IMG/VR virus record: IMGVR_UViG_3300027896_005002
Span: 124,001-188,000 of that record
Strand: one strand, 5' to 3'
DNA: 64,000 bases
A program made the position numbers and the translations under genes. Below the pieces are notes generated by a model. That model made no database searches, was not told the origin of the DNA, and saw only the letters and a list, made by a program, of their open reading frames with translations. Positions 1 to 23,767 of this stretch are shown here, piece after piece (position 1 is the stretch's first letter; each line of letters starts with the position of its first letter).

Positions 1-2
1 CA

Positions 3-2358: not shown

Positions 2359-2490
2359 ACTCGAGAGAGTAGTGTGTAGAGTAGTGATATCGCGAGATAG
2401 AGCGTAGAGATAGAGTGCTTTCTGTTCGACTGCCACATTTAGGCGCTCGACAAAGAGGAGAAGATAGGGAATAAGTGAGTAGAGAAGATT

Positions 2491-2901
2491 TTAGTAGAGT
2501 TTGATGCCGGCTTTTTTGAAGTCCGATTTGAGGACGAAGACTGGGAATAATTCAGGTAGTAGTTGGTTGTTGGTATCGTAGGCTTTTGTGCCTTTTCTTT
2601 TTGATGGCCAACCGACTTTTGAGAAGTTTTTTTCAGTGTAGTTGCCAATGAATATTTCGTTTTTCTTTAATTCAGGATGATGTATCCTCTTTGAAGTTTT
2701 TATAATGATTCTATCGACAATAGCGCTAAGGAGACAAAGCAGAGGGCCAATGATGATGAGGAGTGAAAGAGGACGATATATGATGCTCGTTATTAGCCAG
2801 TGGTATATGATGCCTATTAGAGTGAGGAGAATACCGATTATAAAGATGATTGATGAAAAGAAGAAATCTATGATAATGAGAATTTTGTTTCTTGAGTTCA
2901 T
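2491..2901 (-). CDS. membrane protein (two predicted TM helices)
   Basis: Two long hydrophobic segments followed by a basic tail. Confidence 0.55.
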   Translation of the reverse strand: MNSRNKILIIIDFFFSSIIFIIGILLTLIGIIYHWLITSIIYRPLSLLIIIGPLLCLLSAIVDRIIIKTSKRIHHPELKKNEIFIGNYTEKNFSKVGWPSKRKGTKAYDTNNQLLPELFPVFVLKSDFKKAGIKLY

Positions 2902-4129
2902 AGTACCTCAGAAGTTCTCGAGATTTTTGAGAATTGTTTCTTCATCCATGTCATCCGGGAGTTCCATATAGTCTGGATTGCTTGGATGTAGATGAGAGCG
3001 AGCAATGTTTCGTTTGATACGTGCTATTGCGAATATGTTGTAATTTTCCATATTAGTATAATCATGAGATAGCGTAGAAATGGCCATTAATTTTTTTAGC
3101 AATGACAGAAGAATCGTTCGGGAGTTTCTTCACAGTACATTTTGAGGAAGAAGGTGCATTCTTTATGAATTTGGCAGGGTTTGTGTAATGATAGTGCTCT
3201 TTTGAGTATGTGTTCCATGAGTATGGAGAGTTCAGATCCTTTAAGATGTTTTGTGCTTTCTTCGACCTCTTCTACGCCACCATGAGCAGAAATTCTGAAT
3301 TGGTGATCACGCCATGTAAAGCGTATTGCATTTTTTTCTGTTGTGAAGTCGATGTCAGTGATTTGTTTTTGGAATGGTATGATATCCGGCGTTGTTAGAG
3401 TTTTTATAATGTCCGATTGTGAGTACATAGTGTTCCTTATAATGTTCCTTATAATAAGTCATTAGCTTTGAGATATGTATCGGTAATGAATTCCAGAGTG
3501 ACGTTGCCTTTGCTGTGATTGTATCCGAAGGCAATAGCGTCTCGAATAAGATCTGTTTTTTTAATGCGAAGTTGGTTACGGACTATTTCAGCATTGTTTA
3601 TAGCTTGTTGTAGTCGACCTTCGGCAATGTGACGGATGATTTCATCCATTAATGTGACTAATGTTGGTGTTGTCATGGATTGATTCCGGGGCGATTGCCA
3701 TAGGGTGCCGATTGGTTAGGGTGATTTACGTGACCGACGACACCAGCAATGGTTATGCCGAGGATAGTGAGGATGACAATGAGTACCATGAGTTCGATGA
3801 GAGTGAAGCCTTTACGTTTTTTCATGAGGACCTCCGATTGAGTAGGTATTTGTGAGTGAAAGCGATAATTTTTGATGGTGATCGAATTTCTACTGGGCCA
3901 TTTTTGGGTACTGTTTTTAAGTAAGCTTTTATAGTATCTGTTAGAGTAGGAAAATCTGGAGATTCTGTAGAATTTTCCATTTTGATGTCGTGTTTTTTGA
4001 GGAAAGATGCCATTGATTGGAGAGTGTCAGTTTCTACAATGAGAGCACATCGTTTGCCAGTACATATGACGGTAGCTTTAGGATAGCGAATGATTCCTTG
4101 TTTAGTCATTATTTATACCTTATAAATAC

Positions 4130-4561
4130 CTAAGCATTGACTTGGTCCCTGAGTTTGTTGGAAAATCGTTTTGCCTGGACGACAGCTTGTGCACTTAAAG
4201 CATAGAAGACGGAATTTCTGACATTTTTGAGAGCGTCTTCTAATTCTGCTGGATCAAGTTCCTTGAAAGATTCGATGATTTTATTGTGATTGAAGTCAGG
4301 AATATTAGCTACAGAGGTCAACGGATTTTGATGACCGTTATGGTGATGTTGAATGACCGCTGGTGGATGAAAGCCTTTGCGAATTTTGTAAAAGTATTTG
4401 AAATTTTTGGTAACAATGGGTTCTTTATCTTTGGACCGTAAATGATAAATGTGAGTGTAGACAGCACTCGATGTGATGTTGAATCGATCCATGAGTTGTT
4501 GTTTGGTGACACCATCGGGGCTGGATTGGATATATTCCAGCATTTGTTGATGAAGTGACAT
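4130..4561 (-). CDS. winged-HTH DNA-binding protein
   Basis: N-terminal LEYIQSSPDGVTKQQLMDRFNITSSAVYTHIYHLR followed by a beta wing. Confidence 0.65.
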   Translation of the reverse strand: MSLHQQMLEYIQSSPDGVTKQQLMDRFNITSSAVYTHIYHLRSKDKEPIVTKNFKYFYKIRKGFHPPAVIQHHHNGHQNPLTSVANIPDFNHNKIIESFKELDPAELEDALKNVRNSVFYALSAQAVVQAKRFSNKLRDQVNA

Positions 4562-4811
4562 AGAAATACTCCTTTATAATAAATATTTTTCTGCCTTACC
4601 GTATGCGTAGTATGATGATGGATGGAATTTTCTCCAAAGTGTGAGAATTCCTACAAAGATCCAAGTTATGGGACCGGTAATGAAAATACATATTTTACGA
4701 TATTTTGTAAATGCGTTTAGAGGGATAACAATTACAGAGAAGTAGCCTATAAGACCCCAGCAACCGACGCCACTTACAAGATATCGCCATAAGGGAATTG
4801 TTTCGTGCATA

Positions 4812-5126
4812 TTATTTCTTTTGAGAAGGTGTTGGTTTAAATTTGATTATTTTACCGTTTTTTTCTTCATAACATATAGGACCTCTTCCATCTTCACGGA
4901 CACCGAACATTCCATTGAGAATTCCAAGAAATCCGACTTTTGAAGCAATGTGTGGTTCATGATTATCGACTTGGATTGTTGGATGTCTCTCGAGGGCTTT
5001 GCGACAATTCTCTCTGTGTTTTATTAATTCATTAGCGCATACCGAATCGAGTTTTAAGATTTCATTTAGCAAGTCGCAGACATCTTTGACGGTAATACTT
5101 TTTTTAACGGTAATACTTTTTGCCAT
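4812..5126 (-). CDS. hypothetical protein, paralogue of 37557..37868
   Basis: Near-identical blocks RHPTIQVD.HEPHI.SKVGFLG.LNGMFGVR.DG.GPICYEEK.GKIIKFKPTPS. Confidence 0.8.
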   Translation of the reverse strand: MAKSITVKKSITVKDVCDLLNEILKLDSVCANELIKHRENCRKALERHPTIQVDNHEPHIASKVGFLGILNGMFGVREDGRGPICYEEKNGKIIKFKPTPSQKK

Positions 5127-5304
5127 AATTCACCTTTTCTATTTGCCGGAAAGCCAGCTGACAAAGACTATTGGACCTATGAATAATAGTACGATGATGA
5201 TGGTTGTTCTTATAGGATGTTTTTCAAAGTCCATAAATGTGCAATTATTTCCCTCAAAATGTGGCAGTCGAATTGTCTCTTTCTCTCTTGGCCGATGGAA
5301 GTGG

Positions 5305-5940
5305 CTATGCTTCGGTTTTTTCTTTTGCTTCTTTGTCGGCTTTCTTTTTCTTTTCGATGTATTGTTTGGATTTTTCCGCAACCGTTATAGTGGCCAGTTT
5401 CTTTAAGACGTCGAGGACCTTGGAGTCATTTTTTTCGAAAAGTTCTGTAAAAGATTTTTTGTCCAGGATGAATTCCACAGGTGATTTTGATTGGACCGAG
5501 CATTTGCCGAATTTGGAAGCAGATGTGGCCAAGAATTTTTGGTCCAATGTTTTGTCGATGCCGAAGTAGAATATGCAACGGCTTTTGCCATTGACTGATT
5601 TGCTCTTTTTCCGGGCCTTGAAAGCGATGACACGGAAGTCTTTGCCGGTTTCGGATTTGAGGCCAAAGATGATTTTGCCGCATTTGTATCCGAGTTTGGT
5701 CAGAGGTTTATTGTCGATTGTAAGGGTTAAGAGATGGCTTTCAAAGTCCGTTACGATTTGTTCCATTGGAGGCCGTTTGTATTCGACCTTGGTTTCGTCA
5801 ACATCTTTTTTCGGCTTCTTTTCAATGGTTGTTGCAGTGGTTACGACTTCCTTTTTCTTTTTTTCCGGTACCGGTTTTTTCTCCGGTTTTTCTGAAGCAG
5901 TTTTGTTTTTGTCGTCAATGACGTCATTGAGTTCGGGCAT
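5305..5940 (-). CDS. Lys/Glu-rich hypothetical protein
   Basis: 211-aa ORF with upstream SD (AGGAG). Confidence 0.6.
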   Translation of the reverse strand: MPELNDVIDDKNKTASEKPEKKPVPEKKKKEVVTTATTIEKKPKKDVDETKVEYKRPPMEQIVTDFESHLLTLTIDNKPLTKLGYKCGKIIFGLKSETGKDFRVIAFKARKKSKSVNGKSRCIFYFGIDKTLDQKFLATSASKFGKCSVQSKSPVEFILDKKSFTELFEKNDSKVLDVLKKLATITVAEKSKQYIEKKKKADKEAKEKTEA

Positions 5941-6718
5941 GGTAGCTCCTATTTGAAGTGTGGGAGAAGTATAAAAACCGTGCTATTTGATTTCTGATCC
6001 GTTGATCGAAATTTCTTCGATGTCGTATAATATTGATAGCTTGTTTGATGAGTTCTTTTTGGCGGTCAATGAAAGTTTGTCGTATTGCCGGTGGTACACC
6101 CTTCATTCTTTGAATTGTTTTTAAATATCTTTTTCTTCGAGGTAAGATGCCAAATTGAATACTGGTTAATGTTTGCCGATTAATAGCTCGTTTTAGAATG
6201 AGCCGGAATAAGGGGATATCATTCATCGCTTCTAAGATTTCCTTTATAAGACCCATATTATGTCGAGTCATATCATTCGATTGTTCTAAAGCTTCTAACC
6301 TTTGCAAAATTTCAAATTGAGTTACTTGACTACTTTGCTTGGTTTCAATGATGATTTGTGACTTATCCCCTAATTTTGCAAAAATATCAGGAATTGAGTC
6401 TTTTTTATTTGTAACATTCTTTAGCATATTTTTATAATCACCATTAAAGTCGTAGATTATTCACATTTCAACGTTTCCAAAAATTCTTGAACTGAGTGAG
6501 TCGTTTCCAATAAAATTTTTAGATCAAGGACATCATCTGTAGTGATTCTTGGTCCGTCTAAAAACTTCGCATGTTCTTCGGCAAATATTATACTCATTGG
6601 ATTTTGATCTGATATTTGTTTTGACATTTCTGCGTACATTTCACTAAGTCGATCAAAAAAATTCATACTCACTCCCTATTATTATAATCAATTAATTCCA
6701 TAAAGAATGTCCACATAT

Positions 6719-7306
6719 CTACGCTACTTTTTTGACTTTGATCCAGTCATTAACATCGATGCCTCGACTTAAATGTGATTTGTAAATGCTGAATTTTTTC
6801 TTAAGGACAATGCCTTCTTCAACTGAAAGATTTCTTTTGATGATTAGGTTATATAGATCCAGGAAATTGTCAGTATATTGACGAATGGAAAATACTTGGT
6901 TCTTATTTAATGGAGAAATAATCTCTGGTGCCGTCAAAAAGTGGCTATAGTATTTCCTTCTTTCGACCAATTGTAATGATCTCAGGTCCTTTCCGTTGTA
7001 ATAAGGCGTATCAAAAATGACTATAATGTTTTTGAAATCTGTCGACCGGAAATTGACTAATTCACCGTCAAAAACTGTGTCGTTTGGAATTTTCTTAAAA
7101 GCATCGACAAAAACTGAAGAATTAAAATCAATAATTGTTCCATGTCGATTGAATAATTGAATTTTGTTGGCAATTTTGAAGATAAGACAACGCCAGCCAT
7201 TGTATTTTATTTCGGCATCCCATTGTGGATTTTTGCTCAATTTGATAAAGTAGTCCGCATTGGGCCATAGCCGAATTGGTTGTGGCGGATAAAAAAACTG
7301 TATCAT
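6719..7306 (-). CDS. ATP-dependent ligase adenylation domain lacking an OB domain
   Basis: EIKYNGWR (motif I), FDGELV (III), IFDT (IIIa), EGIVLK (IV), WIKVKK (V) at the very C-terminus. Confidence 0.8.
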   Translation of the reverse strand: MIQFFYPPQPIRLWPNADYFIKLSKNPQWDAEIKYNGWRCLIFKIANKIQLFNRHGTIIDFNSSVFVDAFKKIPNDTVFDGELVNFRSTDFKNIIVIFDTPYYNGKDLRSLQLVERRKYYSHFLTAPEIISPLNKNQVFSIRQYTDNFLDLYNLIIKRNLSVEEGIVLKKKFSIYKSHLSRGIDVNDWIKVKKVA

Positions 7307-7516
7307 AAACCGCGCTCAATTTCGATTTTTCTGGCTGCATCTAAAAAATGTGACCTTAAAGGATCAGTTAATTCTTGGGCTTTGAGTCTGAGTCGACGAA
7401 CGTACTCTATCGGATCTGTGCGCAATAATTCCTGATTTGATTGTGCACGATTTTTAATGAATTCAGGATTTAAAACAGCATTTTTAGGGATTTCCCATTG
7501 TTCCATAAGTACTCCT

Positions 7517-7900
7517 TTATCCTTTTAGAACCTTTTTGTATTTTACAATTTTTAAAATTGGTTTGAAAAAGTTTGGTTTTTTAATGATAGAGCCTTCATG
7601 AGGCAATAATAAAGCCACTGCACTTTTATGCCGTTTTCCATGAAGATGAGATTCTGCATTTCCTTTTGGCATTGATATTTTACAAGTATCACAATAAAAT
7701 TCATGTTTGGGATCGTATAACGGTTCTTGCAGAGGTGGAAATACTTCATCATAAATTGTTTGAAATTCTGCCCGTTCATTTGCAGTGCATTCCATTTCCC
7801 AAGCATCAGCACCACAATAATCAATTATTCCTTTTGCGAGTTGTAAAGCTCTTTTGAGTTTTTCAAGTAAAGATTCTTTGATTTCGCCTTGGATATTCAT
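7517..7900 (-). CDS. protein with matrin/U1-type C2H2 zinc finger
   Basis: FYCDTCKISMPKGNAESHLHGKRHK. Confidence 0.55.
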   Translation of the reverse strand: MNIQGEIKESLLEKLKRALQLAKGIIDYCGADAWEMECTANERAEFQTIYDEVFPPLQEPLYDPKHEFYCDTCKISMPKGNAESHLHGKRHKSAVALLLPHEGSIIKKPNFFKPILKIVKYKKVLKG

Positions 7901-9036
7901 GCGTCCTCACTTTTATATTTTAATTGGGTCATTTTGCATTCACTTACATCAACGTCATCTCTTATTTCTTTGAAGCTTGGTTGGTATAAGCAACCGTTTC
8001 GATATGCGTAAAGGTATTTAATTTCGACGACTGATCCAATAGGTGGGTGCCGACTGCAACTGCAATAGCCGACAAATTCTCGATCACCAGCTCCATTGAA
8101 AAGTTCCATTCCTATTGAGGCTTTTCCAGTACGACCTTCAACGACGATGACTGAACATTCGGCATAAAATTTGAATTTGAATTGATCGAGACCTTTTCCG
8201 GGAGAGAAAATTGCTGACATTTTCTTGAAGACGATTCCTTCTTTTCCTTGGGCCTCGAGTTTGTTGTAAAAAGCGACTTTAGCTGCTTTGCCGACAATGA
8301 TGTCAAGGATTTTGATTTTGGGACCGAATCGTAATTGATTAAGAATATGATATCGTTGAAGATAAGGCAAAATGCGCAAATTCATTGTACCGAGTTCGAG
8401 GATGTCCCAAGTATAAAAAATGCCGTTGACTTGTTCACCATCGATGAGAATATTGGGATTGATATTACTTAGCGATGCTTTGAATTCCGAATCACATTCA
8501 CAACCGATTCCTTTTTTATTTCGAACAGTTAAAATACCGTTGGTCAAATGAAGAGAAAGATGCTTACCGTCCTTTTTTTCTTGAGCACAAAAATCATCGT
8601 CATCAAGCAATCGAGCAAGGTCATCTTCATCAGTTTCTGTAAGTAATTGAGGGATGAATCCAATGTCGATGTCATCGTCAGGTGCTTCCCTTCTTTCTGC
8701 AGCTTTTCTTCGATTTTCTCGAATTAATTTGAAAGCCTCGGTCGCTGTCCGGAATTTTACTGGATCGTTTTGGCCAGTTTGACTGTCTTGGTGACACTGT
8801 CTTACGATTTTGCGAAAGGCTGTTTTTACTTCATCCTCTGTTGCCGTTGGTGATACACCAATTACCGTGAAGGCTGATGTCGCAGTTAGATTTTTAGCAG
8901 AATCTGAATTTTTAAGAGCTTCACTAAAAATACCGGCCCATTGATTGGGATTTCCTTTTTCACCAGTATATGTACCGTATTTTGATGGTGATGACCAGAT
9001 AGAAGATTTTTTAGCCATTATCGAACTCCTCTGCAT
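7897..9036 (-). CDS. J-domain / ATP-dependent DNA ligase fusion (probable start 9018)
   Basis: J-like helix set AFTVIGVSPTATEDEVKTAFRKIVRQCHQD; ligase QEKKDG, IDGE, WDILE, EGIVFK; OB domain VVEIKYLYAY...LYQPSF...RDD. Confidence 0.8.
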   Translation of the reverse strand: MQRSSIMAKKSSIWSSPSKYGTYTGEKGNPNQWAGIFSEALKNSDSAKNLTATSAFTVIGVSPTATEDEVKTAFRKIVRQCHQDSQTGQNDPVKFRTATEAFKLIRENRRKAAERREAPDDDIDIGFIPQLLTETDEDDLARLLDDDDFCAQEKKDGKHLSLHLTNGILTVRNKKGIGCECDSEFKASLSNINPNILIDGEQVNGIFYTWDILELGTMNLRILPYLQRYHILNQLRFGPKIKILDIIVGKAAKVAFYNKLEAQGKEGIVFKKMSAIFSPGKGLDQFKFKFYAECSVIVVEGRTGKASIGMELFNGAGDREFVGYCSCSRHPPIGSVVEIKYLYAYRNGCLYQPSFKEIRDDVDVSECKMTQLKYKSEDA

Positions 9037-9552
9037 GCATGTTCACGAGTTCCGATTGCGAATTTTTTCATGACTTCTTTTGATTCCCGAGCTAAAGGTC
9101 CATGCCATTGGGACATATTGGCCAAAGAATAAAGTATTTGCGTTTTTAATCCATCAGTTCCATATTCATCGATTGCTCGAGGAATGGCCTTCAAATATGC
9201 AGCACCGATAGGATCCCTTACATTTTCTATAGCATTTTTGATGGCTTCATCGAGTGTCATAATGTGGTAGTCCTATTTTGCTTTAATGATTTCAACCGGA
9301 ACGCCTTCGCAACTATCATGTTGTTGTCTATCAATTTTTGCATATTCGGTTTTGAGAGTTTCGATGATAGATGCCATTTTTTTCATGATTACAGCTTTGT
9401 GATTTGCGCCTTTTCCCTGATTCCACATTTCACCGCCGATTGTAACGGCGTATTTTGCTCCACCATCATCATCCGATTCCGTAATATTTACCCGAAATTT
9501 TCGAGTCTTTGTTACGAATACTTCAACCTTTGCTTTTTTAGCCATGATTTCC

Positions 9553-9699
9553 TCACGCCATCACTAAGGTTTTTGATTTTCTGGTTTTAGTCCGCTCATC
9601 CTTTTTGTACCAGCGATATGCCGTTGATTTGCTGATCGGTTTCGTGTTCGGTGAACAGGTTCCGTATTTTGAAGGCGATGTCCAAATGCTGTTTTTCAT
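9553..9699 (-). CDS. 48-aa ORF not in the track, sharing an N-terminal motif with the J-ligase
   Basis: MKNSIWTSPSKYGTC... behind SD AGAGGA; ligase starts MAKKSSIWSSPSKYGTY. Confidence 0.6.
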   Translation of the reverse strand: MKNSIWTSPSKYGTCSPNTKPISKSTAYRWYKKDERTKTRKSKTLVMA

Positions 9700-9716
9700 A
9701 ATTTCCTCTTTTTTTT

Positions 9717-9995
9717 TTAAGCATGAACCAAAGCTTGTTTCGTGTAGGAAGCCAAGGACCTACGACCGAATTTCCTACCTTGAACGCCGATAGATTCCAG
9801 GTGCTTGCAGTGGCCATGACGAATATTTCCACGGCAGGAACAAGTCCACCATTGGGCGCCAGGAGCATTGTCGTAAGAAACCATGTAAAGTTGATTGGAA
9901 GAAGACGACCGGACTTTGAATCTGACTTTGTAACGATCTGAATCCGGAAGAACCTCGACCGCTGTGTGCTGAATCCTGCTCATTAAATCGTTCAT
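9717..9995 (-). CDS. SWIM zinc-finger protein
   Basis: WTCSCRGNIRHGHCKHL (CxC...CxH). Confidence 0.7.
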   Translation of the reverse strand: MNDLMSRIQHTAVEVLPDSDRYKVRFKVRSSSSNQLYMVSYDNAPGAQWWTCSCRGNIRHGHCKHLESIGVQGRKFGRRSLASYTKQALVHA

Positions 9996-10025
9996 ATTTG
10001 CTCCTTATGGTTTATTGTTTCCTTT

Positions 10026-10077
10026 TTCCTATTAATTATAATCATGTTGACAGCGCGTACTGCGTTCAAAATGTGGC
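10026..10077 (-). promoter_or_regulatory. bipartite motif GCCAC box + TGATTATA box + SD
   Basis: Minus strand GCCACATTTTGAACGC...ATGATTATAATTAATAGGA; 33 nt between box starts. Confidence 0.75.
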
Positions 10078-10137
10078 CGTTCTTTCTATGTATTTTTAAC
10101 GTAGAAATACCGCCATTTTTTGACGACGGAAAGGAAA

Positions 10138-10908
10138 TCACCTATCAAGAATTGTAGTCTTTGAAATTGTTCCGCCTTGAGGTATTGAAATCAAATAACA
10201 GCCGTATTCTTTGCTATATTGACGGTGTATTTTGATGCCAGTTTTTTCCGAAGCGTATTCAATTGACCTATATGCATATGGAGGAACTGCAATACTTCCA
10301 TACATGGCATTCTTTTCCAAAAAGTCTAAAAGTTTGACGTAAAAATATGTTCCTTTTTTGGGAAGTGGGAAAAGAGTATTCTCAGTAGTGAACCTAGACT
10401 CTGTTCCTTGAACCAATTGATGTTTCCATTCTTTCCAATCGCCACTGATGATCCAATTGCACGGTTTTGGATAACCTTCAATGTGATAGACACAAACATC
10501 AAGACCTGAAAGCGTTTTTACAATTGATCGAGAATAAAAATTGCCCGGTCGATTTTCATCATAACCTTCTAATCGATCCAAGAATTGGAAGTGGTCAACT
10601 TCAAAAACTTCGCCATGTACAAGATAATTGAAAGGATCTTGAAGGGTAATGAAGGGAAATCCTACCGTAAAATTAAACATTCGACCTCGGATTTTATCTT
10701 TACAAATAAATTTGCCATTAGAATTTTCCATTACCTGATAATTACTTAATCCACGTAAAAGAGTCCCATATACAAAGACGAGTTTCTTCATACTTTTATC
10801 TCGATTTTTTTGAAAGATTTTTCGATCATTGGCCTTACAATAACCGCAATTTGTGGCACTTTCTTGTGACCGATGTTTATGACCTTCACGACAAAGATAT
10901 ATTGACAT
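10138..10908 (-). CDS. gamma-glutamylcyclotransferase (GGACT/AIG2-like) with extra N- and C-terminal domains
   Basis: VFVYGTLLRG..NY, VHGEVFEV, LDRLEG, Y.R; C-terminal domain shared with 22006..22425. Confidence 0.85.
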   Translation of the reverse strand: MSIYLCREGHKHRSQESATNCGYCKANDRKIFQKNRDKSMKKLVFVYGTLLRGLSNYQVMENSNGKFICKDKIRGRMFNFTVGFPFITLQDPFNYLVHGEVFEVDHFQFLDRLEGYDENRPGNFYSRSIVKTLSGLDVCVYHIEGYPKPCNWIISGDWKEWKHQLVQGTESRFTTENTLFPLPKKGTYFYVKLLDFLEKNAMYGSIAVPPYAYRSIEYASEKTGIKIHRQYSKEYGCYLISIPQGGTISKTTILDR

Positions 10909-12688: not shown

Positions 12689-12717
12689 ATATTCTCCTTT
12701 AAAAAAGTGATTTCCTT

Positions 12718-12768
12718 TTCCTATTTATATAATCAGTCATTTTTCACAAACCGCGTTCCAAAAGTGGC
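12718..12768 (-). promoter_or_regulatory. bipartite motif GCCAC box + TGATTATA box
   Basis: GCCACTTTTGGAACGCG...CTGATTATATAAATAGGA, 33-nt spacing. Confidence 0.75.
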
Positions 12769-12896
12769 TGTCGACCTAACTATTTAGTTATCCATGTTTT
12801 AGAAGAATCTGAATGGTTGTATATAGAACATAAATAAAAGTCGATGATAAAATGACACCAAAGATGAATTTGTATAATTTTCTCATATTGCTCTCC

Positions 12897-13767: not shown

Positions 13768-13897
13768 TCTCCTATTATATATGATCATGTCACTACGTGT
13801 TGTGCGTTCCAAATGTGGCTGTAGAAAAAAACAAATCTACGACTGCCATTTTTGGACCGCAATTAGTGGATTGATATGATTATATAAAATAGGAGAA
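13768..13897. promoter_or_regulatory. back-to-back divergent pair of bipartite motifs
   Basis: Minus GCCACATTTGGAACGC (13819) and plus GCCATTTTTGGACCGC (13845), each followed 32 nt later by TGAT(T/C)ATAT and AGGAG. Confidence 0.8.
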
Positions 13898-13924
13898 TGA
13901 AAACAATAAAAAAGGAATGATTAT

Positions 13925-15121: not shown

Positions 15122-15192
15122 AAAAATGAAGAAATCTGGCCAAACTGTAAAAAACTGTTGATTATAAACATATACAAAAAGAGGAGGATCAC

Positions 15193-15615: not shown

Positions 15616-15624
15616 TTCAGAAAC

Positions 15625-15652
15625 GGCCGTCCTAAATGGCGCCTGGACGGCC
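15625..15652 (+). terminator. GC-rich hairpin
   Basis: GGCCGTCC/GGACGGCC stem just after the 15615 stop; weak U-tract. Confidence 0.45.
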
Positions 15653-15705
15653 AATTCAATTGAACGGAATTTCCTTAACCAATAACAACCTTCAAAGGAG
15701 GGAAT

Positions 15706-16029
15706 ATGGCGACAAAAAAACTTAAGTCGCTTAAGATCGAACGCAAAAAGAAAAAGGCCAAAAAGCAGGCAAAAATTCGCTTGACCATCAAGGTCGCGAA
15801 AGTCGATCGCACGGCACGGAAAATCAAAGCCTTTGCGAAGAAATCCCTGAAATCAGCCATCAAGGGCCTCAAAGGCGCCAAGGTCAAAAAAATACCCGAA
15901 CGCCTTTACCGGAAAATCGATGCCGCAATCGCCGGCAGCGCCGATCTCAAAACAATCGTCGACGAAGCCGTCGTCAAAATGGTCAATGACAACCTTCTTC
16001 CCAAAAAGAAAGAAAAAGCGGAAGCATAA
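15706..16029 (+). CDS. histone H1-like Lys/Ala-rich basic protein
   Basis: Very basic K/A-rich N-terminal two-thirds. Confidence 0.55.
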   Translation: MATKKLKSLKIERKKKKAKKQAKIRLTIKVAKVDRTARKIKAFAKKSLKSAIKGLKGAKVKKIPERLYRKIDAAIAGSADLKTIVDEAVVKMVNDNLLPKKKEKAEA

Positions 16030-16035
16030 ACCGTC

Positions 16036-16191
16036 ATGGCCACTAAAAGAAAAAAGAAGGACACAAAATTGATTCCTTGTCCCGAATGGAATGAGGATTC
16101 AAAATGTGTCCTTCCTTCTTGGGAAAGCAAAAAGTGTGGAAAGAACTACTGCAAAATATTACCACATGTTGAAAACAAAAATATAATATGA
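16036..16191 (+). CDS. 51-aa Cys-containing small ORF (not in track)
   Basis: MATKRKKKDTKLIPCPEW...CVLP...CGKNYC. Confidence 0.45.
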   Translation: MATKRKKKDTKLIPCPEWNEDSKCVLPSWESKKCGKNYCKILPHVENKNII

Positions 16192-16210
16192 TAAAATATT
16201 ATAAGAACTA

Positions 16211-16391
16211 TCCGGCGTAGAAAGGTCGACGTAACTGTCCCTTCAAAACTAACGGAGCTTATTAAGCATTGAAGTTAGCTACGCACTTGGTAATTGAAGA
16301 AACATCAATTACATTCACTTACTAGAAAACTTAAATTGATTTTGAAGAACTGATTGAGACTGAGAATGCATGCTCGGTCTCAATTTTTTTT
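16211..16391 (+). ncRNA. candidate structured ncRNA ending in an intrinsic terminator
   Basis: Nested helices CTTCAAAA/TTTTGAAG, CTAAC/GTTAG, GCTT/AAGC, GTAATTGA/TCAATTAC; terminator stem 16354-16383 plus T-tract. Confidence 0.4.
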
Positions 16392-16410
16392 GAAATGATG
16401 ACAACCACTT

Positions 16411-17466
16411 TTAGCGACCAGTTTTGTCAAGATAAATTGGGTCTCTCTGTTTCAAGAATAATCTGCCAAAACCAACAATATATCTTTCTATCATTGGCTT
16501 TATCACTATTCCCTCTCTCAATTTATCAATCATAAAACTTTGACTATGAGAAGCTTCAGGCAATGTCCGTCCATTCAACCAATCCTTTAATGAAATATAC
16601 GTCGAAATTATAGGCACCCATATTGCTCTCAAACCTGTTCGATCTAATATAGGTTGAAGTTCATTATAACCCAAAGGCCGACCATTTATATCTATATCAA
16701 ACAACCTTGTCGTAAACTTCTTTAAATTATAATGATTACCTTGCACTCCAGGCCCTATAAACTCACTCCTTATAGTCACTGCACAATTTGGATAAAATTC
16801 TGATTGTATTATTTGAGCGGCTACTATTAATCCTTCATTTTTTGCTACTTGCCAAAAAGAATGATCTTCATGATCTGGCAAATTAACTATTCCATGACCA
16901 TGTGTACAAACACTTATTGTCTCATCTATACCAACAAAAGTAGCCATATTGCTACCTTCAATCTTCTCTGTTATCCACACTAATTCATTCATCAATATGT
17001 CAACAATATCAATATGAGTCTCACAATTCTCAATATCATAATTATAAACCATCTCAGGTCTCTGAATCAAATTACCTGTACTTGTAATTATCTCTGGCGC
17101 TTCATATTTAGTAACTCCTATAGCTGCTGTCAAATCAGTTGGTAAAGTATCAGTTTTTAAATATGTTTTTACACTATCTATGGATGTAACTAGTCCTTGA
17201 CTTATTTCACCACGTAAGCGAACAGTTTTGATTCTATTTTGATCTTTTCCAGACAAAAAATTCTTGATATTTTGTTGTTGGATAAAACCTTCAGGTAATA
17301 AAGAATCTATAGGGAAATATATTATTTCGTCACCAGTTTTATATAGACCTTTGGGTATTACAAATTGATATGTCATATCCTCGACTTGACCTAATTCAAG
17401 TTTATCTGCATTTGGATGAGGATACACTTTCGACAATTTCTTTCTTTCAACAGCAAAGGTACTCAT
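16411..17466 (-). CDS. RNA ligase, DRB0094/Rnl5 family
   Basis: N-terminal OB with HPNADKLEL and RIKTVRLRGEISQGL; ITEKIEGSN; SEFIGPGVQGN.Y; FDI; REGIVIKP. Confidence 0.9.
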   Translation of the reverse strand: MSTFAVERKKLSKVYPHPNADKLELGQVEDMTYQFVIPKGLYKTGDEIIYFPIDSLLPEGFIQQQNIKNFLSGKDQNRIKTVRLRGEISQGLVTSIDSVKTYLKTDTLPTDLTAAIGVTKYEAPEIITSTGNLIQRPEMVYNYDIENCETHIDIVDILMNELVWITEKIEGSNMATFVGIDETISVCTHGHGIVNLPDHEDHSFWQVAKNEGLIVAAQIIQSEFYPNCAVTIRSEFIGPGVQGNHYNLKKFTTRLFDIDINGRPLGYNELQPILDRTGLRAIWVPIISTYISLKDWLNGRTLPEASHSQSFMIDKLREGIVIKPMIERYIVGFGRLFLKQRDPIYLDKTGR

Positions 17467-17620
17467 TTTGATTCCTTTAGATAGATATGTGTTTCTCCCT
17501 CCGGAACTTGATTTATTTTATGCGTCAACCAACAATTAATTTACGTCGAAGATTTTTATTTTTTCTACGCGCCTAAAAGTGGCAGTTTGAACTCGAAAGT
17601 ATTTCTCCCCCTATATAATA

Positions 17621-17662
17621 TAAGGGACTCATCTTCAATTTCTTGAGAAGACAAGTCCCTTA
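17621..17662. terminator. long hairpin between RNA ligase upstream region and 17681 ORF
   Basis: TAAGGGACT/AGTCCCTTA outer stem with inner TCTTCAA/TTGAGAAGA pairing. Confidence 0.5.
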
Positions 17663-18127
17663 ATAAATAGGAGGAGGAAATTATTTAAAAATATCTGTAG
17701 TGTCTATAACATGAACTCCCGTAGAATCAAATTGAAATTGAGGTTTAGGTGTCACTGGTTTTGGAAGTGGCACAAGAAGTATCTGAATTTTGTCGAGATT
17801 TCTTTCAATTTTTTTCACAGAAACACTAATATTCAAAAGAGTAACTGTAATAATACAAAGTAAAATGACGATAATAACTTTCATATAATCCCTTTGGTTA
17901 AATCAGTTTCATAACGGAAATGAAAGGCAATTTCACGTGCATCTTTTGGAGACAAGCCTTTTGCTAATACCCACCCAAAAGCCAGAGAATACCAAATCTT
18001 GCTCTCGTGGTACTTCAATCGCAGTAGCTTTATCGGATACTTCTTGCTTAAAAGTTGTCTTTAAATCTTTGAGAAGAATTGTTCCGCTAGGAATAGTATA
18101 TTTTGAATGAGCACCGGCGAACTTCAT

Positions 18128-19087
18128 TTAATTATTTCCCTTTTTGTAAGTGATCTGTTTTGTGCCATTACTTCCGATTCGGACTATTTTCGGTGAATTA
18201 GGATCCTTAGGATTTGATCCACATCCTCGAACTATCGTCGGCTTTGACTCTCTTGAAAAAGATGTAATGCCTATCGGCCGATTTGCTTGTGTCACTTTCC
18301 GATAATTATGATCGTATTGACTTGAGGATAAGGGAGAATCATCGCTTTCATCGGAGGTATAAGTTATTGTCGCAGCTTTTTTCTTCTTCTCCTCTATAAC
18401 TCCCTTCCTCGAGAACTTATTTTTCACCACATCAAATTCCAGAAGTTCCCTTTCATAAAGGGTCGCAAAACTGATATTCGGGAATATTCCCATTTCATTT
18501 TTCACTCCCAACGTCTTCAACATGATTTTCTTTGTGGAAGCAAAAAATATTATCCCATGATACATTGCCATACATAACGGTTTCCCACCATCGGTATAAA
18601 AATACATTTTCTTCTGGGATTTCGAATACATCACCAAAGCTGCTGACCCTTCAATTGATGCTATTGCATTTTTGAGTGACGTTCTTTCCGTATAAGCGAG
18701 AATCGATTCTGAGTCGACATCACTTGTATATGGGTAATTTGCCAACTTATCTAAATGGACCGTTCCATTATGCACCAACACCCAATTTTTTGATTCAAAT
18801 GGATGTGCATTTCGATTTTCTTTGATTGTTGCAAGACTAGATGAAGCATATCGGCAATGGCCGATTACAAATCGTTCATTGCCAATTGTCGGACTGACGA
18901 AATGTTCATTGACAAAATCTTTGGCACAAATGGAAGCTTTTATAATTCCAGTTCCGAGGGAATAATATCCGGTAGCATGCTCTCCGCGTTCTTGGGTATT
19001 TATCAAACCCTTAACAAAAAGGGAGTTCAAATCAAGATCAGTTGTCGTTTCTTTTGTTGGTTTAATCCATCCAAATATTCCACACAT
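18128..19087 (-). CDS. class II glutamine amidotransferase (Ntn)
   Basis: MCGIFG with N-terminal Cys2, GHCRYAS, NAHPF, HNG, DVDSE. Confidence 0.9.
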   Translation of the reverse strand: MCGIFGWIKPTKETTTDLDLNSLFVKGLINTQERGEHATGYYSLGTGIIKASICAKDFVNEHFVSPTIGNERFVIGHCRYASSSLATIKENRNAHPFESKNWVLVHNGTVHLDKLANYPYTSDVDSESILAYTERTSLKNAIASIEGSAALVMYSKSQKKMYFYTDGGKPLCMAMYHGIIFFASTKKIMLKTLGVKNEMGIFPNISFATLYERELLEFDVVKNKFSRKGVIEEKKKKAATITYTSDESDDSPLSSSQYDHNYRKVTQANRPIGITSFSRESKPTIVRGCGSNPKDPNSPKIVRIGSNGTKQITYKKGNN

Positions 19088-19942
19088 CGTTTTTGTCTCC
19101 TTGTTAATATAATCAACAGTTTTTTCAATGACCGTTTCGTCTTTTTTGAAAATCTTCGACCCTTTGACTAACTCTACGAACTGACGCTTTTTGTTCGTCG
19201 CTTAAATGTTCGTAGCTACGACCGTAATGTTTCCTTGCTAATTCCTCATATTTTTCATTCATGATTTTCCTCACAATCTTCGCAGTTTTTTTCCGAATGT
19301 GGACATTCTTCTTTTCCGCAAACATTTGATTCTTCTTCATCATTTATTTGCAGTTTGAGTTTTTCCACTACATCAAAAAGATTCGGTCCCATTGAAACAA
19401 ATTCATTAGTAACTTGTTTGCCGTAAGCTTTCCATTGTTCATAAAGATGTGGATCAAGTCTGCGAAGAGCACTGCTAAGATCATTCATTGCTGACTCAAT
19501 GGTGTTTGCCAAAGACTGAATTTCATCAAAATCTTCTTGAATAAGACTCATAAATTTATCTCCTAAGCCGCATCAATGATTTGTAGATTTTTTGCGAATT
19601 GTTCTCGTTCAATCCTCCAACGTTCGTTTGCCGCAGTTACCTTAGTCTCATATTCTGATTTCAATTGGTTCAGACAATTATCATGATTTATGTCTGGATT
19701 GCCGATCCTCTCGTTTTGTTTGAGAGCAAAATAAACGGCATCGGCGTAAGCGGAATAACCAGGAGCTCCAGCATTTGATCGGGAAAGTTTACTAACTCTT
19801 TCCTTGACAATAACAATCCTGGCTTTCGGATATTTAACTCTTTCAGCCTTAATTTCTGCAAGAACGCTGTCTTTATCATAAGTCTTATAAAGTCCTGTAA
19901 AATGTAATCCTTGACTTAAGGCTTCTTCATTTTTCATATTTT

Positions 19943-20090
19943 CCTCCTATTTATATAATCATGAATTCTCGTTATTGCGCGTCCAAATGTGGCTGTCTCA
20001 ACCTATCCACAAACCTAACCATTTTTCACGTAGATTACTACCACATTTTGACCCGCGTTCACGGAATATGATGATTATATTAATAGGAAA
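19943..20090. promoter_or_regulatory. back-to-back divergent pair of bipartite motifs
   Basis: Minus GCCACATTTGGACGCG (19993) and plus ACCACATTTTGACCCGCG (20040), each with TGATTATA 32 nt downstream. Confidence 0.8.
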
Positions 20091-20857
20091 AGGAGGATTT
20101 ATGATTTATATGGGTGATGATTATAGCCGCAAAGATGATTGGTCAACGGTCCCTGAAAAAGTCCTGGAAGAATCCAAAAAATTGACCAATGAAAACACCG
20201 ATAAAGAAGCTCTTACGGTCAATGATGACATTATGATCACCAATGGCGAAGCTCTGGAAGAAGCCGCAAACGAGGAAATGATGATGTCAATGTACGAAAA
20301 CGGAAATCTACAACCCGAGGATTTATAATTCATGGAAACCATCGTTATCGATCTTATCAACTTCATTGAAAAATATTTCGGTGGTCGAGTTACTGATTGC
20401 GGCGGCGAATTCGTTGACAAAGAATGTGAATTTAGCTGTAAACAATATCATCAATGCAAACGAAATTATAACATGGCGGACGAACTTGAAGCTCTCAAAA
20501 AACGTGCACTTAAAAGGAGGAATATATGATCGGTAACAGCCCATTCGGTCAAATGGAAAAAGAAGCAGATCTTGACACAGCCCGGAGAATCATGGAAATT
20601 GCCGGAGCTGCCACAAACGAAGAAGCTGTGGCAAATGCCGGCGGCGAATTAACATTCTACCAACTTCAATACAAACTCGAGAAAGAAGGCCGAATTTCCA
20701 TACGACCGATAATACCTACAGAAATATGTATCATTGATTCACTTGACCTCCTTCTCGAAGAAAGAGATGTCAAACTTGCTCTAAAAATCCTCCATGAAGT
20801 TCGTGAAACTTTCTCTCGATACGATGAATACATGGAACTTGTCGGAGTCCTCGTCAA

Positions 20858-21391
20858 ATGAAGTTCAAAGACATCAAACAATTCCCTCAAATCTACTACA
20901 ATGTCAACCTCTCATGGTCATCTCTTGACGACTGGCTTGCTCGTCAAATGAATATCGGTGAATACAAAAGTCAGAGAGAAGGCCTCTCCTCTCTCAACAT
21001 CAATCCTGACTTTCAACGCGGCCACGTCTGGACTAAAGACCAACAAATCGCCTACGTCGAATTCATGCTTTGCGGCGGCACTTCCGGTCGCAATATCTAC
21101 TTCAACCATCCAGGATGGATGTCATCCTTCAAAGGTGAATTCGTCCTTGTTGACGGTCTCCAACGCATTACTGCAGTCCAAGCTTTCATGCACAATAAAA
21201 TCCCAGCCTTCGGCTCTCTTATTGAAGACTACGAAGATAAAATGCCATACAATGTTGATTTCATAGTTAATGTGGCCAAACTCCAAACACGAAAAGATGT
21301 CCTCAACTGGTACATACTCATGAACTCTGGCGGCACACCTCACACTCAAGAAGAAATTGACCGAGTCAAAACTCTCAAGGACCAACTATGA
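20858..21391 (+). CDS. stand-alone DUF262 (ParB-like/GmrSD N-terminal) protein
   Basis: INPDFQRGHVW, NIYF, LVDGLQRITA. Confidence 0.8.
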   Translation: MKFKDIKQFPQIYYNVNLSWSSLDDWLARQMNIGEYKSQREGLSSLNINPDFQRGHVWTKDQQIAYVEFMLCGGTSGRNIYFNHPGWMSSFKGEFVLVDGLQRITAVQAFMHNKIPAFGSLIEDYEDKMPYNVDFIVNVAKLQTRKDVLNWYILMNSGGTPHTQEEIDRVKTLKDQL

Positions 21392-21810
21392 AAATTATCA
21401 ACATTGTCATCATTGATGATGACCCCAACATCCGCGATATGGTCAAACTCAACATCGGCAATGAAAACTTCAATCGAATAGCTGTCGCTTCTCACAGAAG
21501 TGACATCATTACTTATCTTTCTACTGCAGACTTCTACATCATCAACGCTCAACAACCAGACTACGACCTCTCTCTTTGGGAAACTCTTCACCTTCTCTCG
21601 AAAAAACTTGACGTCCCATTCAACAAATTACCTGTCGTCATCATGACTGACGGCTACTCCCTACCATTTGATCCACAACTACCCAGTTTTGAAAAACCAT
21701 TTGACTTTCAACAATTAATCGTGGCCATCGTCAAACAACGACTTGATTATATAGAATACAAACTATTACCTCTTGCTATACACGGAATAGGAAAATGGAG
21801 TATTAACTAA
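21388..21810 (+). CDS. orphan CheY-like receiver domain
   Basis: IVIIDDD, vIMT, FEKPF; phospho-Asp position appears degenerate (YIINAQ). Confidence 0.65.
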   Translation: MKIINIVIIDDDPNIRDMVKLNIGNENFNRIAVASHRSDIITYLSTADFYIINAQQPDYDLSLWETLHLLSKKLDVPFNKLPVVIMTDGYSLPFDPQLPSFEKPFDFQQLIVAIVKQRLDYIEYKLLPLAIHGIGKWSIN

Positions 21811-22005
21811 TGATGACAAAAATATACAAAATCACAGGCTCTTCTGAAAAACGATCAACAACTGTCTACAGAAACAAACACGACATTCCTCGTACAATAG
21901 CATTATTAGAAAAATGTGGCTATCAAAACATCAATATTGAAGACATCATACTCAATCAAACACACGTCCATTACATTTTCCCAAACCTTAAAAAACTCAA
22001 TTAAG

Positions 22006-22425
22006 ATGAACCACCAATTTACTATACAAAACACTGATTTCCCAAGGCCAAGAATATGCTCGTCTTTTTGGCGCCAACTCGTAACATATCTTTCCCTACA
22101 TCCGGAAAAAGAAATATCAATACCATCTTTCGCTTACCGCTCAATCGAATACGCGTCTGAAAAGACAGGAATCAAAATCAGCAGGAAGCTCGACACAAGA
22201 AATAATCACTATAATGTCAAATTAAGTGCAGAACATTACTACATCAAATTGAGCGCGGAATACTGTCACGCCAAATACGGTTGTCTAAAAAAGAACGGAA
22301 TGAATTGTAAGAAATGTGAACATTACAAATATTACAAATATAAATTAAAACATCCCGGATATTTTAGTAAGAAAGCTCGTGCCGCAAGGAAATTGAAACG
22401 TCTCAGCAGAAAGGACTCTTTATGA
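22006..22425 (+). CDS. hypothetical protein sharing a domain with the GGCT C-terminus (track ORF 21916..22425; probable start 22006)
   Basis: FT.qNT.FP.P ... AYRSIEYASEKTGIKI in both proteins. Confidence 0.65.
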   Translation: MNHQFTIQNTDFPRPRICSSFWRQLVTYLSLHPEKEISIPSFAYRSIEYASEKTGIKISRKLDTRNNHYNVKLSAEHYYIKLSAEYCHAKYGCLKKNGMNCKKCEHYKYYKYKLKHPGYFSKKARAARKLKRLSRKDSL

Positions 22426-22771
22426 ACTGCCAACAACTCTTACAACAAGTCGACTCACTCGGCAAAAAAGCCAAAACTCACTACCAATCACTACGTCAAA
22501 CACAAAACGTCAAAAACTCTGCCATACAAACTATCAATCTCTTTCAACAACCAACACGCCTCATCGTCTCTCCCCAAATCCTTAACCTCATTCGTCAACG
22601 TTCTGACGGAATCACACTCATCAAACTACCCAAAACATCTAAATACGATCACATCTCAAAAATTCAATTCCACAAAAACTACCACTCACTCAATTCATCC
22701 CAAAAAAGACAAATCCGTCAACTTTATAAAGAATCTGAACGTGAATGGAAAGCCGAAAGCGAAGTATCATG

Positions 22772-23014
22772 AAATGCAATCGTTGCGGCGGTTGCTGTCT
22801 TGCCAGCCCTTGCTTTGAAATTCCTTTTGACAAAGAAATATTCATTGAAATCAATGGTCTCAAAATTCATAAATGTCCTCACCTATCTTTCAACAACAAC
22901 ATCGCTACTTGCAATGTCTTCAAATCAGGCAATATCCACAAAAACTCTAATTGCACTTCTAACCACCCTCCAGAATTCTATAAAAAATATCTAAACTCCA
23001 AAAACCTCATATAA
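22772..23014 (+). CDS. small Cys-cluster (YkgJ-like) protein
   Basis: MKCNRCGGCC...C...CPHL...C; similar to 42611..42820. Confidence 0.55.
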   Translation, partial: KCNRCGGCCLASPCFEIPFDKEIFIEINGLKIHKCPHLSFNNNIATCNVFKSGNIHKNSNCTSNHPPEFYKKYLNSKNLI

Positions 23015-23767
23015 TTTTTTTCTCGCCTCAAAATGTGGCAGTTATCTCATTATCATAGATTTCTTCTTTTCATCAATCATCACACTACCGTTATATACGT
23101 CACATATTACTACTTGTAAACAACCTCAATAATCTTCTATCATCACTTCCCATCACTCTATTACACAATAATCATTATCAGTCGTCATATCGCGTATGAA
23201 GGCTGCTGACATTCATCATCTCTCTTCAGTGTTTCCTCTGGTATATAGCTATTTTCCCAAATGGCCTTTACTTTCTTCAATTTCGTCTCTATCTCTCAAT
23301 CGACGGAGATAAATTAACATTATTCTCTGTAAACTTACTTAAAAAGCATTCAAAACATCATCATCAACTTACGTGAAATATCCTCTAAAATACTAAGGCC
23401 CTCTCTTCTCAACAAATATTACCCTCTGTAAACATACAGATTATATTTCATATACCTTAAATCAGTGGGCGATAGAATAGATTTTAGTAAGTTAAAATAT
23501 ACCATACGCGCGCGCAATATCAATTAATTATAGAGAGAAGGGTTTGACGCTTTTTATCTTGTAAATACACGTAATTGCACTAGCTACGTTGCCATAAGTA
23601 AATTTACAAGAGATACCTACCCGGAGCAGATGCCGCGTTGCGTCGGGTGCCGGAGAAGTCTTGCGAGAGCCTATCGCGTTGGCCCCTACCACAACAAACC
23701 ACAATAAATGAATGGTATAGATAAAGGGTCAGTAGAAGGTCTATATATGTAGGTATGTCACTAAGAG

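What the first reader, a model, noticed from the sequence alone, without database searches (positions are those of the whole stretch)
2430..23040. GCCAC boxes also occur alone and bracket gene blocks as inward-facing inverted repeats
Seen: four copies lack the downstream box: plus 2432 (CTGCCACATTTAGGCGC), plus 10112, minus 17583 (CTGCCACTTTTAGGCGC), minus 23039. Three sit at the 3' end of a gene block, pointing against it. With the promoter-linked copies they give inward-facing pairs 2432/10077, 10112/12768 or 13819, 13845/17583 or 19993, and 20040/23039. No close full-length copy was noticed beyond ~23 kb. Inference: the box may be a recombination site or protein-binding boundary, making 2.4-23 kb a set of invertible or exchangeable cassettes. 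No recombinase is visible in the window.
Basis: partly seen in the sequence, partly recalled or inferred. Interest (0 to 1): 0.65.

Follow-up and report, generated by a model that had tools for sequence, protein, structure and literature searches.

The report
Promoter half-sites bracketing phage gene cassettes
The GCCAC box is the upstream half of a two-part promoter that a group of giant freshwater phages uses for a 20-kb block of early-type genes; lone copies sit at the far ends of the transcription units, conserved and pointing inward, and look like protein-binding boundary marks and points of evolutionary reshuffling rather than switches for DNA inversion.

Summary
The window lies in a 416-kb jumbo-phage record. 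Strong GCCAC boxes are confined to about 2.4-23 kb. Six belong to two-part promoters: box, then 32-33 nt, then a TG-extended -10-like element ending in TAGGA. The copy at 10112+ is degenerate and is part of a terminator-like hairpin.

Seven related phage contigs carry the same promoter and also orphans. Full promoters point at the next gene (25 of 26). Intergenic orphans mostly point into a gene's 3' end (18 of 25, p=4e-6), often just beyond a terminator hairpin. They are conserved as islands in otherwise diverged spacers.

Block order and orientation differ between relatives, but two assemblies of this phage are identical across the island. No serine recombinase was found, and only a sub-threshold integrase-like match.

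Best reading: the orphans are stand-alone binding sites for the promoter-recognising factor, marking unit ends, and are also short homologies for PeSL-like shuffling. They are not an active inversion system.

A perfect 37-bp inverted repeat (2845-2881 / 23045-23081) bounds a contig with twice the flanking depth. The island may be a collapsed long terminal repeat.

The parts
10027..10085 (-). Full two-part promoter (box core at 10077) driving block 9995->2491
   Evidence: (28.9 bits)
12718..12776 (-). Full two-part promoter (box core at 12768) driving block 12688->10138
   Evidence: 35.0 bits
13769..13827 (-). Full promoter (box core at 13819), back-to-back with the one at 13845+
   Evidence: inverted repeat I1
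13837..13895 (+). Full promoter (box core at 13845) for the amidoligase block 13925->16191
19943..20001 (-). Full promoter (box core at 19993) for block 19937->16411
   Evidence: inverted repeat I3
20032..20090 (+). Full promoter (box core at 20040, ACCAC variant) for block 20100->23014
2424..2449 (+). Orphan box 45 nt past the stop of gene 2491-2901(-), pointing into it. It lies outside the double-depth contig.
   Evidence: (33.4 bits)
5248..5273 (-).
   Evidence: (31.3 bits)
10104..10129 (+). Degenerate orphan box. On the minus strand it forms a hairpin plus U-rich tail right after the stop of gene 10138-10908.
   Evidence: (25.1 bits)
17566..17591 (-). Orphan box co-oriented with the RNA ligase gene 17466-16411, 117 nt upstream of it
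   Evidence: (26.0 bits)
23022..23047 (-). Orphan box 11-25 nt past the stop of the last plus-strand gene (22745-23014), pointing into it. It lies 3 nt from the right arm of the 37-bp inverted repeat.
   Evidence: (32.1 bits)
16396..16421 (+). Weak box-like site at the 3' end of the RNA ligase gene, pointing into it
   Evidence: 16.8 bits; uncertain
2845..2881 (+). Left arm of the perfect 37-bp inverted repeat, inside the 5' part of gene 2491-2901. It is the left limit of the double-depth contig.
   Evidence: (I2)
23045..23081 (-). Right arm of the perfect 37-bp inverted repeat. It is the right limit of the double-depth contig.
   Evidence: (I2)
16352..16385 (+). Intrinsic-terminator-like hairpin where the convergent blocks 13925->16191 and 19937->16411 meet

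Best explanation
The GCCAC box (about 17-20 bp, consensus agACnGCCACaTTTtGA) is the upstream recognition half of a clade-specific two-part promoter. It serves a 20-kb module of early-type genes: small ORFs, DNA and RNA ligases, and DNA-modification enzymes.

In full promoters the box lies a fixed 32-33 nt upstream of TGAYTA, a -10-like TATAnT and TAGGA. That places the box at roughly -53 to -36. Its TTG motif is 22-23 nt from the -10 hexamer, too far for a standard -35. The box is therefore most likely bound by a dedicated factor, either a phage activator or a phage sigma-like protein working with the host polymerase.

Orphan boxes are stand-alone copies of the same binding site, kept by selection. 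They sit mainly just past the 3' ends of transcription units, often right behind the terminator hairpin, and point back into the unit. Inferred function: they mark and insulate unit ends, either by blocking read-through or by acting as auxiliary sites for the factor that controls the promoters.

Because the same 20-50 bp recurs in both orientations, it has also served as homology for recombination by the phage's own RecA-type system. That would explain why blocks are reshuffled between relatives. The boxes are not crossover sites of a dedicated invertase.

Shown: anatomy, spacing, orientation bias, conservation, rearrangement among relatives, and absence of alternative arrangements and of serine recombinases. 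Inferred: the binding factor, early timing, and the insulating role.
For: Confinement and enrichment of the boxes.

In the window plus 7 relatives, all 26 full promoters have a spacing of 32-34 nt (25 of them 32 or 33) and a shared downstream consensus. 25 of 26 point at the next gene. Of 25 intergenic orphans, 18 point into a gene's 3' end, at a median of about 74 nt from the stop (Fisher p=4e-6).

Terminator hairpins lie between orphan and stop in L013 3009, L018 1030 and 12533, L019 14575, L020 7600 and L021 5788. Between L013 and L020 the orphan boxes are identical islands within diverged spacers.

The record shows no T7-type or multisubunit polymerase. It does encode a sigma region-2 protein and a protein with two sigma region-4 domains. 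An HTH protein is encoded inside the island. A RecA-like gene is present.

Gene blocks are reordered and inverted in L012, L013, L015 and L018-L021.
Against: No transcript data exist: no RNA run holds this phage. Start sites, timing and any effect of orphans on read-through are therefore untested.

Seven intergenic orphans, including 5265- and 17583- in the window, are co-oriented with a downstream gene and could be promoters with a different -10.

The window's own end orphans (2432+, 23039-) have no hairpin beside them.

Some rearrangement breakpoints between relatives lie inside operons without a box, for example between 7306 and 7897.

Selection to keep operons intact would place breakpoints at promoters even if the boxes played no mechanistic role.
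Confidence: 0.6

Rival explanations
1. The boxes are crossover sites of a site-specific recombinase, so that 2.4-23 kb is a set of invertible or exchangeable cassettes.
For: Boxes occur in inverted pairs around every block. Block order and orientation differ among relatives. The right arm of a perfect 37-bp inverted repeat abuts box 23039.
Against: The record has no resolvase or large serine recombinase, and only a 19-bit integrase-like match below cut-off at G000:208.5 kb. Two assemblies are identical over 21.2 kb, and the one stretch laid (1000-6900) shows no alternative joints. The box has a clear promoter role with rigid spacing. Recombination within boxes of full promoters would not create orphans. 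Caveats: the record may be incomplete, and contigs hide rare variants.
Confidence: 0.05
2. Orphans have no regulatory role. They are scars or hot spots of homology-driven shuffling of promoter-terminator modules, as proposed for PeSL cassettes of T4-type phages.
For: This is a hyperplastic-looking region of small ORFs with repeated regulatory motifs. Blocks are reshuffled among relatives. The phage has a RecA-like recombinase. Orphans often sit beside terminator hairpins, giving a composite motif. PeSL precedent: PMC2839356 and PMC4122927.
Against: Scars should decay. Instead the orphan cores are as well conserved as promoter cores and stand out as identical islands in diverged spacers. Their strong orientation bias is not predicted by random scars. 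PeSLs act as direct repeats, whereas these are mostly inverted relative to the unit's promoter.
Confidence: 0.17
3. Orphans are working promoters with a different or weak -10. They make antisense or convergent transcripts at unit ends, or act as internal promoters such as 5265- and 17583-.
For: Seven intergenic orphans are co-oriented with a downstream gene at promoter-like distances. Purine-rich sequence follows several orphans, as it follows full promoters. L013 18444 and L020 14980 share a second conserved downstream pattern.
Against: No conserved -10-like element lies at the fixed distance in the 18 inward-facing orphans. In several, that position is occupied by a terminator hairpin. No small ORF or Rfam family lies downstream of them.
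Confidence: 0.15
4. The outer pair, together with the 37-bp inverted repeat, marks the ends of a foreign mobile element with terminal inverted repeats that is inserted in the phage.
For: The island has 38% GC against 31% in the flanks, its own promoter class, a perfect 37-bp inverted repeat at its limits and double depth.
Against: No transposase or replication gene was seen among 40 proteins scanned, most of them island ORFs. No target-site duplication flanks the arms (by eye). Gene 2491-2901 reads intact across the left arm, with its start codon and ribosome-binding site inside the island. The same genes and promoters form a resident module in all relatives.
Confidence: 0.05

Closest known systems
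PeSL (promoter-early stem-loop) regulatory cassettes of T4-type phages (Arbiol et al. 2010, PMC2839356; Comeau et al. 2014, PMC4122927)
   Same: Both are short, conserved promoter or terminator-associated motifs repeated through a region of small non-essential early genes. In both, differences between related genomes map to these motifs, and phage homologous recombination is the presumed driver.
   Different: A PeSL is one composite unit (stem-loop plus sigma70-like promoter) acting as a direct repeat. Here the promoter is two-part with an unusually distant upstream box. The repeated unit at far ends is only the upstream half, mostly inverted relative to the unit's promoter. Mini-circles could not be tested.
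Activator-dependent phage promoters, e.g. T4 middle promoters with a MotA box (own knowledge)
   Same: Both combine a -10-like element with a conserved phage-specific upstream box in place of a standard -35, in a phage that relies on the host polymerase plus its own factors.
   Different: The box sequence and its position (about -53 to -36 rather than -30) differ. No MotA or AsiA homologue was tested. Stand-alone boxes at operon ends are not a described feature of the T4 system.
Invertible segments and shufflons (Gin/Hin/Cin, Rci; own knowledge)
   Same: Both have inverted short repeats bracketing DNA segments.
   Different: Those systems encode the recombinase next to the segment and switch coding ends of one gene family. 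Here no such enzyme was found, no alternative orientation was seen, and the repeats are promoter parts.
Long terminal repeats of T5, SPO1 and Twort-like phages, with short inverted repeats at the repeat boundaries (PMC7596081; PMC5418689)
   Same: Both involve a discrete segment at about twice the depth, carrying early-type genes with their own strong promoters and bounded by a short inverted repeat.
   Different: Only contig-level depth from one run is available. The segment is also richer in GC, so bias is not excluded. The boundary repeat is 37 bp rather than 12 bp. No read-start pile-ups could be examined.
Polar protein roadblocks such as Tus-Ter or protein-mediated transcription termination (own knowledge; a works-like comparison only)
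   Same: Both involve oriented protein-binding sites placed at the ends of units and facing the incoming machinery.
   Different: No binding protein has been identified here and no termination has been measured. There is no sequence relation.

Membership tests
Two-part sigma-type promoter | Two conserved elements at a fixed distance | tested here: met
   The spacing from GCCAC to TGAYTA is 32-34 nt in all 26 (25 of them 32 or 33).
Two-part sigma-type promoter | Lies upstream of genes and is co-oriented with them | tested here: met
   25 of 26 point at the next gene.
Two-part sigma-type promoter | Canonical -35 hexamer 16-18 nt from the -10 hexamer | tested here: not met
   The TTG of the box is 22-23 nt from the TATAnT hexamer. 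The consensus scan did not pick these sites up as sigma70 promoters, apart from one marginal match at 13853.
Two-part sigma-type promoter | Mapped transcription start | not testable with these tools
   No RNA run holds this phage.
Site-specific invertible segment or shufflon | Dedicated serine or tyrosine recombinase encoded in the element or genome | tested here: not met
   PF00239 and PF07508 gave no match. PF00589 gave 19 bits, below its 27-bit cut-off, at G000:208.5 kb. The record may be incomplete.
Site-specific invertible segment or shufflon | Both orientations present in the population | tested here: inconclusive
   Assemblies are identical and the contigs show no alternative joints. 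However, contigs hide rare variants, and a 37-bp repeat longer than the word size cannot be phased.
Site-specific invertible segment or shufflon | Inverted crossover sites flanking the segment | tested here: met
   Inverted boxes and a 37-bp perfect inverted repeat are present. This feature alone is not sufficient.
PeSL-type mobile regulatory cassette | Composite motif of a strong early promoter plus a terminator stem-loop | tested here: inconclusive
   Orphan box plus hairpin composites occur in relatives, but full promoters lack a linked hairpin and the window's end orphans lack one too.
PeSL-type mobile regulatory cassette | Insertions, deletions and replacements between close relatives occur at the motifs | tested here: inconclusive
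   In L012 versus the window, a whole promoter-led block is moved and inverted at box-bearing spacers. Other breakpoints lack boxes. The relatives are too distant (45-78% amino-acid identity).
PeSL-type mobile regulatory cassette | Mini-circles formed by recombination between motifs | not testable with these tools
   This needs raw reads or PCR.
Long direct terminal repeat (T5 / SPO1 / Twort-like) | Discrete segment at about 2x read depth (at least 1.8x criterion, PMC5418689) | tested here: inconclusive
   Contig depth is 48.1 against 24.1 and 22.8 in the flanks. This is contig-level only, from one run, and is confounded by 38% versus 31% GC.
Long direct terminal repeat (T5 / SPO1 / Twort-like) | Short inverted repeats at the repeat boundaries (Twort-like, PMC7596081) | tested here: met
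   A perfect 37-bp pair lies exactly at the limits of the double-depth contig.
Long direct terminal repeat (T5 / SPO1 / Twort-like) | Read starts pile up at fixed termini | not testable with these tools
   Only contigs of the run are held.
Transposon with terminal inverted repeats | Transposase gene and target-site duplication | tested here: not met
   No transposase appears among the Pfam hits of the island ORFs. The bases flanking the arms are not duplicated.

The most novel reading that the evidence does not exclude
One phage-specific factor uses the same oriented 20-bp site in two ways. Placed 32-33 nt upstream of a -10, the site switches the promoter on. Placed alone and inverted just behind a terminator, it acts as a polar stop or insulator. 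The early module, possibly the phage's long terminal repeat, would then be built of self-contained, portable cassettes of the form site - genes - terminator - inverted site.
Probability: 0.25. Interest if true: 0.7.

Novelty: new variant of a known kind. Interest (0 to 1): 0.5.

Why it matters
Transcription control in uncultivated jumbo phages is almost unknown. This finding gives a concrete, conserved promoter class for one clade. It also gives a testable oddity: the promoter's upstream half-site is retained, with opposite orientation bias, at the far ends of units.

If the half-site is a boundary element, it would show how phages keep densely packed, strongly transcribed early cassettes from interfering with each other. 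It would also help explain why such cassettes move as units in evolution.

The depth step bounded by a 37-bp inverted repeat offers a way to locate genome ends of a giant phage from metagenomic data.

Tried and rejected
- Rfam on the whole window gave no family.
- Folding the transcribed strand across six inward-facing orphans showed no shared structure. Only one neighbouring hairpin, in L013, was significant. The reverse-complement box is therefore not itself an intrinsic terminator.
- A two-part-promoter pattern scan of IMG/VR returned 9 single, unrelated hits with no box clusters.
- The phage collection gave no DNA or protein match for the island. The neighbouring helicase has only remote matches.
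- A profile search of IMG/VR with the amidoligase found only distant relatives at 25-31% identity.
- Whole-record pattern searches in the relatives failed because those records are not held.
- The two non-coding flanks share nothing except the box and the 37-bp repeat, and they are not conserved in relatives.
- Terminase models PF03237 and PF17289 found nothing, so the packaging type could not be inferred.
- The T7-type polymerase search is uninformative because its control also found nothing.
- Compared by eye, the box does not fit the sigma54 consensus, DnaA boxes or the Bacteroidetes -33/-7 promoter.
- The gene behind the only out-of-island promoter gave no useful domain.
- A genome-wide upstream k-mer survey timed out.
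- Contig starts of relatives are not shared physical ends: L040 extends 919 bp beyond L041.
Full report
What the window is. The window is bases 124001-188000 of a single 416,029-bp IMG/VR virus record. The record has 31% GC and 28 tRNA genes in clusters. It shows no T7-type or multisubunit RNA polymerase, although the T7-type control was uninformative. It does have a sigma region-2 protein and a protein with two sigma region-4 domains. This is a jumbo phage from a freshwater metagenome. The record starts and ends inside one repetitive array. An independent ENA assembly of 415,903 bp has nearly the same ends, so the map is probably almost complete despite CheckV's 77% estimate.

The observation. 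A position matrix built from 11 copies gives 12 hits of at least 25 bits within genome 126.4-147.0 kb and none elsewhere. The training-independent core GCCAYWTTT occurs 14 times in this 20.7 kb against 0.85 expected, and 28 times in the remaining 395 kb. Six copies belong to full promoters, and one more full promoter lies at genome 107,611. The 10112(+) copy is degenerate and doubles as a terminator-like hairpin for the gene ending at 10138. Orphans 2432+, 10112+ and 23039- face into gene 3' ends. Orphans 17583- and 5265- are co-oriented with the next gene.

What the region encodes. Pfam hits include two ATP-dependent ligase-like proteins (one fused to a DnaJ domain), an RNA ligase, and a phiEco32-type amidoligase. 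There are also a glutamine amidotransferase, a gamma-glutamyl cyclotransferase-like protein, a GmrSD N-terminal-like protein, a receiver-like domain and an HTH protein. The remaining genes are many small ORFs without matches. No replication, structural, transposase or recombinase genes were seen. This looks like an early, host-takeover and DNA-modification module; that reading is an inference from content.

Relatives. Homologues of the amidoligase (40-60% identity) lie on contigs of up to 326 kb from other metagenomes, beside many of the same genes. The promoter is conserved in these contigs, whose GC ranges from 35 to 49%. In the window plus 7 relatives, all 26 full promoters place GCCAC 32-34 nt (25 of them 32 or 33) upstream of TGAYTA. 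A TATAnT-like hexamer and TAGGA follow. This puts the box at about -53 to -36, with its TTG 22-23 nt from the -10-like hexamer. That is too far for an ordinary -35, which suggests a dedicated factor.

Orphans in relatives. Orphans are present in every longer relative (L013, L015, L018-L021; none in the 4.8-kb L012). 25 of 26 full promoters point at the next gene. Of 25 intergenic orphans, 18 point into the 3' end of a gene, at a median of about 74 nt from the stop (Fisher p=4e-6). In at least six cases a bidirectional terminator hairpin lies between the stop and the orphan. Between the two most similar relatives, the orphan cores are perfectly conserved islands in diverged spacers.

Recombination. 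Among relatives the blocks are clearly reshuffled. In the closest one (L012), the promoter-led block that begins at 9995 in the window follows the amidoligase block in the same orientation. In the window it is inverted and lies two blocks away. The cyclotransferase-like and amidotransferase genes also change strand and neighbours. Some breakpoints lack boxes, however. Selection for intact operons would place breakpoints at promoters in any case.

Within this phage there is no sign of ongoing exchange. Two assemblies are 100% identical over 21.2 kb. The source run's contigs break only at a 37-bp repeat; only 1000-6900 was laid, and the 20,223-bp contig's length fits the reference. No serine recombinase was found, and only a sub-threshold integrase-like match. 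A RecA-like gene exists. The nearest described analogue is PeSL-mediated modular shuffling in T4-type phages. It differs in that the far-end element here is only the upstream promoter half, and it is mostly inverted.

An unexpected bracket. A perfect 37-bp inverted repeat lies at 2845-2881 and 23045-23081. Its right arm begins 3 nt from orphan 23039. Its left arm lies inside the 5' part of gene 2491-2901, which reads intact across it. In the one public run that holds this phage, the contig between the arms (20,223 bp) has depth 48.1. The flanking contigs have 24.1 and 22.8, and the repeat itself has 79.3.

A twofold step bounded by short inverted repeats is what a collapsed long direct terminal repeat looks like. 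A criterion of at least 1.8x is used for Bacillus phages, and 12-bp boundary inverted repeats are characteristic of Twort-like phages. T5, SPO1 and their kin carry early genes in such repeats (own knowledge). The island is also richer in GC, at 38% against 31%, so coverage bias remains a live alternative. I rate the terminal-repeat reading at about one half.

Mechanism proposed. The full elements are promoters: this is shown by their anatomy and not yet by transcripts. The orphans are selected, oriented copies of the factor-binding half, placed behind terminators. I infer that they insulate units or serve as auxiliary sites. Secondarily, they provide homology for evolutionary shuffling. Confidence in this overall reading is 0.6. 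The specific insulating role is much less certain, at about 0.25-0.35.

Noticed in passing
window 2845-2881 and 23045-23081; contig 2852-23074: A perfect 37-bp inverted repeat bounds a 20,223-bp contig with twice the k-mer depth of both flanks (48.1 against 24.1 and 22.8). This may be a collapsed long terminal repeat, or it may be GC bias.
   Followed up: partly
window 2065-2360: All four copies of the palindrome GAGATCTC in the 416-kb record, and 12 of 62 GAGATC/GATCTC half-sites, lie in this non-coding stretch just left of the island. It could be a protein-binding array, for example for packaging or replication.
   Followed up: partly
window 1567-1804: An XRE-type helix-turn-helix-like reading frame is split over three frames at two A-rich runs. 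It may be a pseudogene or contain sequencing errors.
   Followed up: no
window 1900-2060 and 23590-23700: GC-rich, structured-looking segments lie inside the two non-coding flanks of about 0.8 kb. They have no Rfam match and no similarity to each other.
   Followed up: partly
window 10138-10908(-) and 21916-22425(+); L038 end: Two proteins at the far ends of different blocks share a short, near-identical peptide module. The N-terminal zinc-ribbon-like motif of the first recurs at the end of a relative's contig.
   Followed up: no
window 6928-6953(-) and L013 5899(-): A box-like sequence sits at the same place inside the small ligase gene in two phages. It may be an internal site or a coincidence of coding constraint.
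   Followed up: no
G000:246653-248560 (outside the window): An 807-aa open frame carries a RecA match split into two parts about 1 kb apart, suggesting an intein-bearing RecA-like recombinase.
   Followed up: no
G000 ends (1-5000 and 411030-416029): Both ends of the record lie in one long array of short repeats. An independent assembly ends at nearly the same places, so the record is probably a near-complete map broken in a repetitive gene.
   Followed up: partly
window 51438 and 51484 (-): Two tandem copies of a sequence resembling the downstream promoter half occur without a GCCAC box.
   Followed up: no
window 26015 and 26207 (+): Two copies of a near-identical stretch of about 50 nt lie 192 nt apart inside the 976-aa helicase-like gene.
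   Followed up: no
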